DNA of 61,541 nucleotides from contig NC_068985.1 of assembly GCF_001194135.2 (NCBI RefSeq), forward strand, positions 79,233,248-79,294,788. The letters are read 5' to 3'. The notes beneath the pieces were generated by a model. The model was given only the letters and a program-made list of their open reading frames with translations, ran no database searches and had not been told where the DNA came from. The position numbers and the translations under genes are program-made. This document shows positions 8,879 to 9,453 of the stretch, in pieces. This DNA is from Octopus bimaculoides (taxonomy: Eukaryota). The first letter of the stretch is position 1; each line of letters begins with the position of its first letter.

Positions 8879-9453
8879 GGTGGAGGCGCAATGGGCCAGT
8901 GGTTAGGGCAGCGGACTCGCGGTCATAGGATCGCGGTTTCGATTCCCTATTAATTACATTTGAACAGTCTGATGTCAGTTTACCTGGAAGGAAACAATGC
9001 AGTATTAATAAGAACATTGGAAATTAATACATGTAATATTCTACAGCTCTAGCATCATCCTTCAACTTGTATCTTTGTGTGTTCATTTATATTTATTGTA
9101 GAATTTTTTTTCTCTTGTTTGGGAACTGTTTCGATTCCCAGACCTGGCGTTGTGAGTGTTTATTGAGGGAAAACACTTAAAGCTCCACGAGGCTCTGGCA
9201 GGGGATGGTAGCGAACCCTGCTGTACTCTTTCACCACAACTTTCTCTCACTCTTACTTCCTGTTTCTGTTGTGCCTGTAGTTCAAAGGGTCAGACTTGTG
9301 ACACTGTGTCACGTGGAATATCCCCGAGGACTACGTTAAGGGTACACGTGTCTGTGGAGTGCTCAGCCACTTCCACGTTAATTTCACGAGCAGGCTGTTC
9401 CGTTGATCGGATCAACTGGAATCCTCGACGTCGTAAGCGACGGAGTGCCAACA
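8879..9453 (+). mobile_element. Full-length tRNA-derived SINE, family B, interrupted by a 180-bp insertion
   Basis: 11-bp TSD atggtagatcc at 8868-8878 and 9454-9464; A and B boxes in the head; nearly colinear with the inverted copy at 43554-43939. Confidence 0.95.
8948..9127. other. Bipartite templated insertion flanked by a 12-bp direct repeat
   Basis: 8948-9064 = 10018-10134 (116/117 identical); 9066-9129 = 12592-12655 (64/64); flanked by gtttcgattccc at 8936-8947 and 9128-9139. Confidence 0.9.

What the first reader, a model, noticed from the sequence alone, without database searches (positions are those of the whole stretch)
8936..9139. 180-bp insertion in a SINE's B box, stitched from two nearby templates
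Seen: the SINE is broken at its B box by 180 bp flanked by a 12-bp direct repeat (gtttcgattccc, 8936-8947 and 9128-9139). The insert is a near-exact copy of 10018-10134 (116/117) joined through one extra base to an exact copy of 12592-12655 (64/64), same orientation, from 1.1 and 3.5 kb downstream. The second piece ends in a 2-nt microhomology (gt) with the repeat. On the minus strand the 12592 boundary is a plausible donor (AAG|GTGTGG), but the other boundary has no matching AG acceptor. Inference: a recent multi-template repair event (polymerase-theta-type end joining or local template switching), or reverse transcription of a local, partly spliced RNA. The near identity points to local templates, because the surrounding mariner is otherwise old.
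Basis: partly seen in the sequence, partly recalled or inferred. Interest (0 to 1): 0.72.

Follow-up and report, generated by a model that had tools for sequence, protein, structure and literature searches.

The report
Locally templated patchwork insertion in SINE
A repeat element in what looks like an octopus genome was recently split by 180 bases copied from two spots 1.1 and 3.6 kb downstream, a tidy single example of a known kind of DNA copying error rather than a new system.

Summary
A SINE (8879-9455) is interrupted after its B-box-like 12-mer by 180 bp (8948-9127), and the 12-mer GTTTCGATTCCC is duplicated on both sides. An intact SINE copy (43555-43939) carries the 12-mer once. The insert is 10018-10134 (116/117), one unassigned base, then 12592-12655 (64/64, whose last two bases GT are shared with the repeat). 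These are the only non-low-complexity self-matches of at least 93% identity in the 61.5 kb window.

Source A is a native inner part of an old element bounded by inverted repeats, so copying went from source to insert. For the same reason A and B were never adjacent. The insert (0.55% divergence) looks younger than the SINE.

Best reading (confidence 0.55): one recent event in which a growing DNA end left at 8947, copied two nearby templates, and returned 12 bp upstream. Junctions share only 1-2 bases. This fits replication or repair template switching (FoSTeS/MMBIR, serial slippage). The pieces are too long and too distant for typical polymerase theta scars.

A reverse-transcriptase route using local RNA is not excluded. 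The 12-bp duplication matches the 11-bp SINE duplications, and one boundary looks like a splice donor, but there is no acceptor and no poly(A). No reads or other genomes could be checked. Known class; modest interest.

The parts
8879..9455 (+). Recipient SINE. The head (8879-8947) has A-box-like and B-box-like motifs; the body runs 9140-9455. It is now split by the insertion.
   Evidence: About 92% identical to an intact copy at 43555-43939 on the minus strand. A-box-like motif at 8892-8902 and B-box-like motif at 8936-8946. No tRNA covariance-model or ARAGORN hit.
8868..8878 (+). Left copy of the SINE's own 11-bp target-site duplication, ATGGTAGATCC. The right copy is at 9456-9466.
   Evidence: Read directly from the sequence. 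The second SINE copy also has a duplication of about 11 bp.
8936..8947 (+). Left copy of the duplicated 12-mer GTTTCGATTCCC (the B-box-like motif plus C). It marks where the growing end left the SINE.
   Evidence: The 12-mer is single in the intact SINE copy.
8948..9064 (+). Insert piece A, 117 nt, copied from 10018-10134.
   Evidence: 116/117 identical. The mismatch at 8953 (A) is the derived state, because both 10023 and the old copy near 4094-4204 carry G.
9065..9065 (+). One base (A) matching neither template. It is either untemplated or a miscopy of C at 12591 after a CA microhomology.
9066..9127 (+). Insert piece B, 62 nt, copied from 12592-12653. It contains a T8 run at 9104-9111.
   Evidence: The exact match 9066-9129 = 12592-12655 includes the shared GT.
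9128..9139 (+). Right copy of the duplicated 12-mer. Its first two bases (GT) are shared with source B (12654-12655) and mark the return point.
10018..10134 (+). Source A. It is an inner segment of an old element bounded by inverted repeats, between that element's inner repeat edge and degenerate ORF remnants.
   Evidence: Its right edge lies 4 nt inside the palindrome TTCATAGGCAGCCTATGAA at 10131-10149.
9660..10183 (-). Short DNA-transposon-like element, about 520 bp, with roughly 54-bp terminal inverted repeats (9660-9713 and 10132-10183). It hosts source A.
   Evidence: Inverted-repeat alignment. Frameshifted ORF remnants. A diverged partial copy at 4094-4204. No transposase-domain hit.
12592..12655 (+). 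Source B, in AT-rich sequence that is unique within the window. On the minus strand its left edge is followed by GT (AAG|GTGTGG).

Best explanation
This is a real, recent, one-off mutation with no function of its own. It was made by serial template switching of a DNA polymerase on nearby DNA.

Proposed sequence of events:
1. A growing top-strand 3' end stopped at 8947, inside the SINE's B-box-like motif.
2. It re-annealed 1.07 kb downstream through one shared base (C; TCCC against TCAC) and copied 10018-10134.
3. It came off 4 nt into a small palindrome.
4. It re-annealed 2.46 kb further on, either through a CA microhomology with one miscopied base or after adding one untemplated A, and copied 12592-12655.
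5. It returned through the shared GT to 8936, 12 bp upstream of where it had left. This duplicated the 12-mer.

This is the FoSTeS/MMBIR or serial-replication-slippage pattern, arising either at a stalled fork or during repair synthesis at a break. A polymerase-theta-like enzyme may have done the priming.

Shown:
- the anatomy of the insertion;
- the direction of copying, from source to insert;
- that the A|B joint is new;
- the very low divergence.

Inferred:
- the order and direction of the switches;
- that the templates were DNA rather than RNA;
- the replication or repair setting.
For: - The donors are intact and the insert matches them at 116/117 and 64/64. These are the only high-identity self-matches in the window.
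- The intact SINE copy shows the empty-site state with a single 12-mer.
- Both templates lie on the same side of the site, in the same orientation, within 3.7 kb, and on the same gap-free contig 5622-16664. Such locality is expected for templates within reach of one fork or break. It is not expected for retroposition.
- Every junction has 0-2 nt of microhomology, plus possibly one stray base. Minimal priming, patchwork structure and interspersed unassignable bases are described for templated insertions (PMC12426944; multi-template events in PMC8421209).
- Returning upstream of the departure point explains the 12-bp duplication without needing a nuclease.
- Both sequence errors (8953, 9065) lie within 6 nt after a proposed landing point.
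- Source A's copied end falls inside the only perfect hairpin with a stem of 8 bp or more in 8-14 kb. Such hairpins cover 1.2% of the window.
- A's right edge is the inner edge of its element's inverted repeat, so A and B were never contiguous.
- Insert divergence is 0.55% (95% CI 0.01-3.0%). The SINE has about 6 private changes in about 190 bp.
Against: - Microhomologies of 1-2 nt are not more than chance would give.
- The hairpin is weak (-5.2 kcal/mol as DNA, z = -0.95). The coincidence of a boundary with it has p of about 0.05 across the four source boundaries.
- Published operational definitions of MMBIR templated insertions use inverted templates within 100 bp (PMC8421209). Here the templates are direct and lie kilobases away.
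- A 12-bp flanking duplication is also the hallmark of a staggered endonuclease cut. It is close to the 11-bp duplications of both SINEs in this window.
- Nothing in the sequence tells a DNA template from an RNA template.
- No reads, other individuals or other genomes could be examined.
Confidence: 0.55

Rival explanations
1. Reverse-transcriptase route. A retroelement enzyme (LINE-type or Penelope-type) nicked the SINE with a 12-bp stagger, or an RT patched a break. The top-strand 3' end at 8947 primed on local minus-strand RNA and copied 10018 to 10134. The enzyme then added one base at the RNA's 5' end or at a hairpin, jumped to a second RNA end at 12592 (possibly a 5' exon released at AAG|GT), and copied to 12655. 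The cDNA was joined through the GT.
For: - The 12-bp duplication is close to the 11-bp target-site duplications of the two SINEs here.
- A 1-nt addition at a template jump is typical of RT end-to-end jumping. LINE RTs are known to make bipartite and tripartite chimeras flanked by duplications (PMC2104539).
- The minus-strand boundary at 12592 is donor-like, ACAAG|GTGTGG.
- 10134 lies about 50 nt inside the host element's end, where a promoter could start transcription (inference).
- Retroelement ORFs are present in the window.
Against: - There is no poly(A), no polyadenylation signal and no tail repeat.
- There is no AG acceptor at 10134, so no real splice.
- The target is not a T-rich L1-type site.
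- Retrocopies normally land far from their source. Two independent local RNAs landing 1-3.6 kb from home needs a special assumption of nascent, tethered RNA.
- A GT next to one boundary is a 1 in 16 coincidence.
- Human class 1 TSIPs have a duplication plus poly(A) plus a TTTT/A site, and class 2 TSIPs lack the duplication (PMC5110952). This event fits neither class.
Confidence: 0.2
2. Assembly artefact. The window is a short-read scaffold with 18 N gaps. On this reading the 180 bp is a wrong gap fill or chimeric join, built from reads of the neighbourhood pulled in by mate pairs, and the 12-bp repeat is an unmerged contig overlap.
For: - There are many gaps in the window.
- The break lies inside a high-copy repeat, where contigs tend to end.
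- Templates 1.1 and 3.6 kb away are within typical mate-pair range. This point is inference.
- No read-level check was possible.
Against: - The insert and both sources lie in one gap-free 11-kb stretch.
- The junctions share only 1-2 bases, far less than any k-mer or overlap an assembler needs. Real reads must therefore span them.
- No other such near-identical local duplicate exists in 61.5 kb.
- Isolated 12-bp direct repeats at this spacing are no more common than chance.
Confidence: 0.1
3. The switching happened during the SINE's own retrotransposition. The RT copying SINE RNA jumped to two local RNAs and back, re-copying 12 nt. On this reading the SINE and the insert are the same age.
For: - An RT is certainly present at this site during SINE integration, which would explain why the templates are local.
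- The SINE's 11-bp duplications are identical to each other.
Against: - Polarising SINE A against copy B with two related fragments gives about 6 changes private to SINE A in about 190 bp. The insert and its sources differ at only 1 in 181. About 14 differences would be expected if they were the same age.
- This argument fails if those changes were inherited from the SINE's source gene rather than acquired after insertion.
- The model needs three jumps, including a return to the first template.
Confidence: 0.05
4. The insert is a footprint of a lost element, or a copy from an unseen locus. Either a DNA transposon inserted in the B box (making the 12-bp duplication) and later excised, with the gap patched by filler DNA. 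Or the 180-mer exists as one piece elsewhere (a paralogous locus or small repeat family) and was copied as a unit.
For: - Retained duplications flanking filler DNA are a classic excision scar (established knowledge, not tested here).
- The rest of the genome could not be searched.
Against: - To my knowledge, 12 bp is not the usual duplication length of the common cut-and-paste superfamilies.
- No transposon ends remain.
- The 180-mer has no terminal repeats.
- A pre-existing A-B unit would not explain why the two best matches lie side by side, co-oriented and 99-100% identical. Source A is moreover an integral part of another element.
Confidence: 0.07

Closest known systems
FoSTeS/MMBIR templated insertions and serial replication slippage (complex insertions made by iterative polymerase template switching)
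   Same: Intact donors, several templates stitched in one event, 0-2 nt microhomology at each switch, occasional stray bases, errors near junctions, and a return near the starting point that gives a small duplication (PMC8421209, PMC3638133).
   Different: The commonly used operational signature is an inverted template within about 100 bp (PMC8421209). Here both templates are direct and lie 1.07 and 3.6 kb away. There is no accompanying copy-number change or larger rearrangement. The event is seen in a cephalopod-like genome, and replication involvement is not shown.
[quoted passage not shown]
   Same: Minimal base-pair priming, patchwork of segments, interspersed unassignable bases, and repeated dissociation and re-annealing (PMC12426944).
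   Different: TMEJ insertions are generally under 25 bp, are copied from the immediate flanks of the break, and usually come with deletions (PMC12426944). Here the pieces are 117 and 62-64 nt, the templates are kilobases away, and the flank is duplicated by 12 bp.
Templated sequence insertion polymorphisms (TSIPs) of humans, classes 1 and 2
   Same: A short stretch templated elsewhere in the genome is inserted while the donor stays intact. Class 1 has a flanking duplication of 5 bp or more. Class 2 has microhomology and untemplated bases (PMC5110952).
   Different: TSIP donors are distant and RNA-derived. Class 1 has poly(A), a polyadenylation signal and a TTTT/A target site. Class 2 has no duplication. 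This event mixes a duplication with class-2-type junctions, has no poly(A), and draws on two linked local donors.
Chimeric retrogenes made by LINE reverse-transcriptase template jumps
   Same: Two or three templates fused head to tail, flanked by a target-site duplication, sometimes with extra bases at the joints (PMC2104539).
   Different: Those chimeras fuse abundant cellular RNAs or LINE RNA and end in the LINE-type tail. Here both parts are unremarkable non-coding sequence from next door, and no tail is present.

Membership tests
FoSTeS/MMBIR-type templated insertion | The inserted sequence is a copy of sequence present elsewhere, and the donor is left intact | tested here: met
   116/117 and 64/64 matches to 10018-10134 and 12592-12655, both still in place.
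FoSTeS/MMBIR-type templated insertion | Microhomology at each template switch | tested here: inconclusive
   1 nt (C), 0 or 2 nt (CA plus a mismatch), and 2 nt (GT). Present, but no more than chance would give.
FoSTeS/MMBIR-type templated insertion | Template close to the insertion site (operationally within about 100 bp and inverted, PMC8421209) | tested here: not met
   The templates are 1.07 and 3.6 kb away and in direct orientation.
FoSTeS/MMBIR-type templated insertion | Arises during replication or break-induced replication | not testable with these tools
   Sequence alone cannot show this.
Polymerase theta (TMEJ) templated insertion | Small insertion (generally under 25 bp) templated from the flanks of the break | tested here: not met
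   Pieces of 117 and 62-64 nt copied from at least 1 kb away, against the description in PMC12426944.
Polymerase theta (TMEJ) templated insertion | Patchwork structure with minimal priming and stray bases | tested here: met
   Two segments plus one unassigned base, with 1-2 nt overlaps.
Polymerase theta (TMEJ) templated insertion | Dependence on Pol theta | not testable with these tools
   Needs genetics.
LINE-mediated retrocopy / class 1 TSIP | Flanking target-site duplication of at least 5 bp | tested here: met
   12-bp exact duplication. The SINEs here have 11 bp.
LINE-mediated retrocopy / class 1 TSIP | Poly(A) or LINE-type 3' tail with an upstream polyadenylation signal | tested here: not met
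   Neither end of the insert has an A or T tail or an AATAAA on either strand. The only homopolymer is an internal T8 run.
LINE-mediated retrocopy / class 1 TSIP | Endonuclease target motif at the nick (TTTT/A for L1) | tested here: not met
   The sites read GCG|GTTTCG and TTCCC|AGACC. The preference of the resident cephalopod LINEs is unknown, so only the L1 motif is excluded.
LINE-mediated retrocopy / class 1 TSIP | RNA origin shown by a spliced junction | tested here: not met
   Donor-like AAG|GT at 12592 but no AG at 10134. There are no GT..AG boundaries on the plus strand either.
tRNA-derived SINE (the recipient element) | Internal Pol III promoter: A box and B box at tRNA-like spacing | tested here: met
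   TGGGCCAGTGG at 8892 and GTTTCGATTCC at 8936, each one mismatch from consensus, 44 nt apart. The same pair occurs in the second copy.
tRNA-derived SINE (the recipient element) | Head recognisable as a tRNA by a structure model | tested here: not met
   No Rfam tRNA match even at E up to 10 on the intact copy, and no ARAGORN call.
tRNA-derived SINE (the recipient element) | Dispersed copies, each with its own target-site duplication | tested here: met
   Two full copies with different 11-bp duplications, plus fragments near 19.2 and 19.6 kb.
mariner/Tc1 transposon (host of source A) | Terminal inverted repeats | tested here: met
   Inverted repeat of about 54 bp, 9660-9713 against 10132-10183.
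mariner/Tc1 transposon (host of source A) | Transposase homology (HTH_48 or DDE domain) | tested here: not met
   No Pfam hit at E up to 10. No BLASTP match to the window's own HTH_48 ORF. No PDB transposase match. Only a motif resemblance from memory remains.

The most novel reading that the evidence does not exclude
The patch was written from RNA. A retroelement reverse transcriptase, acting at a staggered nick in the SINE, copied two nascent local antisense RNAs end to end. One started at the neighbouring transposon's promoter (5' end at 10134). The other was a 5' exon fragment released at the AAG|GT site (3' end at 12592). This would be a cis-acting, poly(A)-independent kind of RNA-templated insertion in a cephalopod.
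Probability: 0.12. Interest if true: 0.55.

Novelty: new member of a known kind. Interest (0 to 1): 0.3.

Why it matters
The event itself has no evident function. It disables one SINE copy, and its T8 run would stop any Pol III transcript early.

Its value is as a clean, fully resolvable scar of a complex mutation:
- both donors, the empty-site state (from a sister SINE copy) and all three junctions are readable;
- the segments are much longer, and the donors much farther away, than the textbook polymerase-theta pattern.

If a genome-wide scan found many such kilobase-range patchwork insertions with duplications of about 12 bp, it would show which template-switching or reverse-transcription process shapes these very repeat-rich cephalopod genomes. 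A single case does not show that.

Tried and rejected
- **Independent copies of the locus.** Exact-product look-ups failed for four ORFs: two spanning the junctions, one in the SINE body and one in a retroelement. None is on record.
- **Orthologous loci.** A composite query of 11 local ORFs against the 5.8-billion-protein set gave no hit.
- **Dispersed 180-mer.** A metagenome scan for the A|B joint found nothing. A control scan for a conserved SINE 25-mer also found nothing, so the null is uninformative because the host's DNA is not in that collection.
- **Related contigs.** Loci fetched through a retroelement protein (L001, L002) lack this SINE and these sequences.
- **tRNA identity of the SINE head.** Rfam and ARAGORN were negative.
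- **Mariner identity of source A's host.** Pfam, BLASTP and PDB were negative.
- **Canonical splicing on either strand.** Rejected for lack of an acceptor.
- **A and B once contiguous, with 10135-12591 a later insertion.** Rejected because 10135-10183 is the inverted repeat belonging to A's own element.
- **Hairpin-induced stalling as strong evidence.** Downgraded, because the hairpin is weak and the coincidence has p of about 0.05.
- **A general assembly habit of leaving 12-bp flanking repeats.** Not seen.
- **Exon hunt to reach the orthologous region in chromosome-level octopus assemblies.** Abandoned. At 0.55% divergence the event is too recent for cross-species comparison to be decisive.

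Full report
**1. What is there**

The window is TE-rich and microsatellite-rich DNA with 18 N gaps. A Penelope-type GIY-YIG ORF at 39532-40041 has named relatives in Octopus sinensis and O. vulgaris at 73-77% identity. The source is therefore probably an octopod, but this was not established further.

At 8879-9455 lies a SINE with its own 11-bp target-site duplication, ATGGTAGATCC. A second copy at 43555-43939 (minus strand) is about 92% identical and has a different 11-bp duplication.

Aligning the two copies shows that the first is interrupted. After ...GCGGTTTCGATTCCC (ending at 8947) come 180 foreign bases. The SINE then resumes with GTTTCGATTCCC repeated (9128-9139). The intact copy has this 12-mer once.

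The 12-mer contains a B-box-like motif, GTTTCGATTCC, one mismatch from GGTTCGANNCC. An A-box-like motif lies 44 nt upstream. No tRNA model recognises the SINE head, so 'B box' is a motif-level label only.

**2. Composition of the insert**

- 8948-9064 equals 10018-10134 at 116/117.
- 9065 (A) matches neither source.
- 9066-9129 equals 12592-12655 at 64/64. The last two bases, GT, are also the first two bases of the repeated 12-mer.
- The unique contributions are therefore 117 + 1 + 62 = 180.
- Both pieces are in the same orientation as their sources, which lie 1.07 and 3.6 kb downstream.
- The insert and both sources sit in one gap-free stretch, 5622-16664.
- A self-comparison of the whole window at 93% identity or more finds these two matches and nothing else.

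- The left junction shares one base (TCCC against TCAC).
- The middle junction can be read as one untemplated A, or as a CA microhomology followed by a C-to-A miscopy.
- The right junction shares GT.

**3. Direction of copying and novelty of the joint**

Source A lies inside a roughly 520-bp element bounded by roughly 54-bp inverted repeats, 9660-9713 and 10132-10183. The element holds frameshifted ORF remnants.

An older partial copy of the same region at 4094-4204 is 69% identical. Its homology runs straight across A's left edge. A is therefore native where it lies, and the SINE copy is the derived one.

At the single mismatch, both the source and the old copy have G, so the insert's A is the derived state.

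A's right edge is the inner edge of the element's inverted repeat. A and B therefore cannot once have been adjacent with a later insertion between them. The A|B joint was created by the event itself.

The SINE lies 205 bp outside the element, not inside it.

**4. Age**

The insert and its sources differ at 1 of 181 positions (0.55%, 95% CI 0.01-3.0%).

I used two related SINE fragments, near 19.2 and 19.6 kb, to polarise the differences between the two full copies. The interrupted SINE has about 6 private changes in about 190 bp. If these arose after its insertion, the 180-bp event is much younger than the SINE. This speaks against template switching during the SINE's own integration. The caveat is that private changes could have been inherited from the SINE's source gene.

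**5. Mechanism**

The geometry is simple if a top-strand 3' end at 8947 was extended successively on 10018-10134 and on 12592-12655, and then re-engaged at 8936. Returning 12 nt upstream of the departure point gives the duplication without any nuclease.

Features that fit iterative template switching (FoSTeS/MMBIR, serial replication slippage) at a stalled fork or during repair synthesis:
- All templates are nearby, co-oriented and on one side.
- Junction overlaps are 1-2 nt.
- One base is unassignable.
- Both copying errors lie within 6 nt after a landing point.

Patchworks with minimal priming and stray bases are well described for templated insertions (PMC12426944, PMC8421209).

The copy of A ends 4 nt inside the only perfect hairpin with a stem of 8 bp or more in the 8-14 kb region. 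This is weak evidence. Such hairpins cover 1.2% of the window, and this one is only -5.2 kcal/mol as DNA.

The specific polymerase-theta label is a poor fit. Those insertions are generally under 25 bp, are copied from the immediate flanks, and usually come with deletions (PMC12426944).

**6. The RNA rival**

The same geometry works if the templates were minus-strand RNAs and the enzyme a retroelement reverse transcriptase.

In favour:
- The 12-bp duplication resembles the 11-bp SINE duplications.
- Single-base additions at jumps are typical of such enzymes.
- Multi-part chimeras flanked by duplications are known (PMC2104539).
- The 12592 boundary is followed by GT on the minus strand.

Against:
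- There is no AG acceptor, no poly(A) and no tail.
- The site is not an L1-type target.
- Above all, the donors are local, which retroposition does not predict.
- Human TSIPs of class 1 (duplication, poly(A), TTTT/A) and class 2 (no duplication) both differ from this case (PMC5110952).

I put this route at about 0.2.

**7. Artefact and other rivals**

An assembly artefact cannot be excluded without reads. It is unlikely, because 1-2 nt overlaps cannot be produced by k-mer or overlap assembly, no gap adjoins the site, and no similar structure occurs elsewhere in the window.

A transposon-excision footprint with filler DNA, or a pre-existing 180-mer elsewhere in the genome, are minor possibilities.

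**8. What could not be done**

- No reads, individuals or sister genomes are reachable with these tools.
- Exact-ORF look-ups failed, as did a composite protein search.
- A metagenome scan found nothing, and a positive-control scan showed that this null is uninformative.

**9. Verdict**

The feature is real as far as the sequence can show. It is recent, and it is best explained as a one-off locally templated patchwork insertion. This is a known class of mutation, in an unusually clean and relatively large example. It has no evident function beyond inactivating one SINE copy. Interest is modest (0.3) unless a genome-wide survey shows it to be one of many.

Noticed in passing
window 36615-39243: A 2.6-kb satellite array with a 46-bp unit (with 92-bp and 138-bp higher-order periods), 68-78% matches between units.
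   Followed up: partly
window 39532-40369 (minus strand): Two overlapping ORFs (169 and 135 aa) of a Penelope-like retroelement with a GIY-YIG-type C-terminus. There are 286 homologues at E of 1e-10 or better, including Octopus sinensis and O. vulgaris proteins at 73-77% identity. This is the only clue to the organism. My own Pfam run found no family.
   Followed up: partly
window 9660-10183: A short element (about 520 bp) with inverted repeats of about 54 bp and frameshifted ORF remnants. It looks like an internally deleted DNA transposon. A 69%-identical partial copy lies at 4094-4204, next to an assembly gap.
   Followed up: partly
window 9104-9111: The insert brings a T8 run 160 nt downstream of the SINE's intact A-box and B-box pair. 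Any Pol III transcript of this copy would now end inside the insert as a roughly 235-nt chimera.
   Followed up: no
window 17548-17922 (minus strand); also 47399-47866, 48016-48288, 28980-29327: Other mariner-type remnants. The first has a clear Mos1-type HTH_48 domain (E = 8e-19). It is unrelated at protein level to the remnants next to source A.
   Followed up: partly
window 1179-1189 and 48163-48173 (minus strand): Further B-box-like 11-mers (GTTTCGATTCC, GTTTCGACTCC) that may mark heads of related SINE copies not picked up by BLAST.
   Followed up: no
window 58564-58971: Three exact direct repeats of 15-21 bp, all spaced 346-347 bp apart. This suggests a diverged tandem duplication of about 347 bp.
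   Followed up: no
window 12036-12277 (also 55993-56210, 57786-57905, 2730-2898, 6565-6869): A second, more diverged dispersed repeat family (75-84% identity between copies) lies between the two source segments.
   Followed up: no
window-wide, e.g. 1366-1694, 4270-4518, 30744-31506: Most of the 18 N gaps are bordered by TA, CA or similar microsatellites, as expected where a short-read assembly breaks.
   Followed up: no
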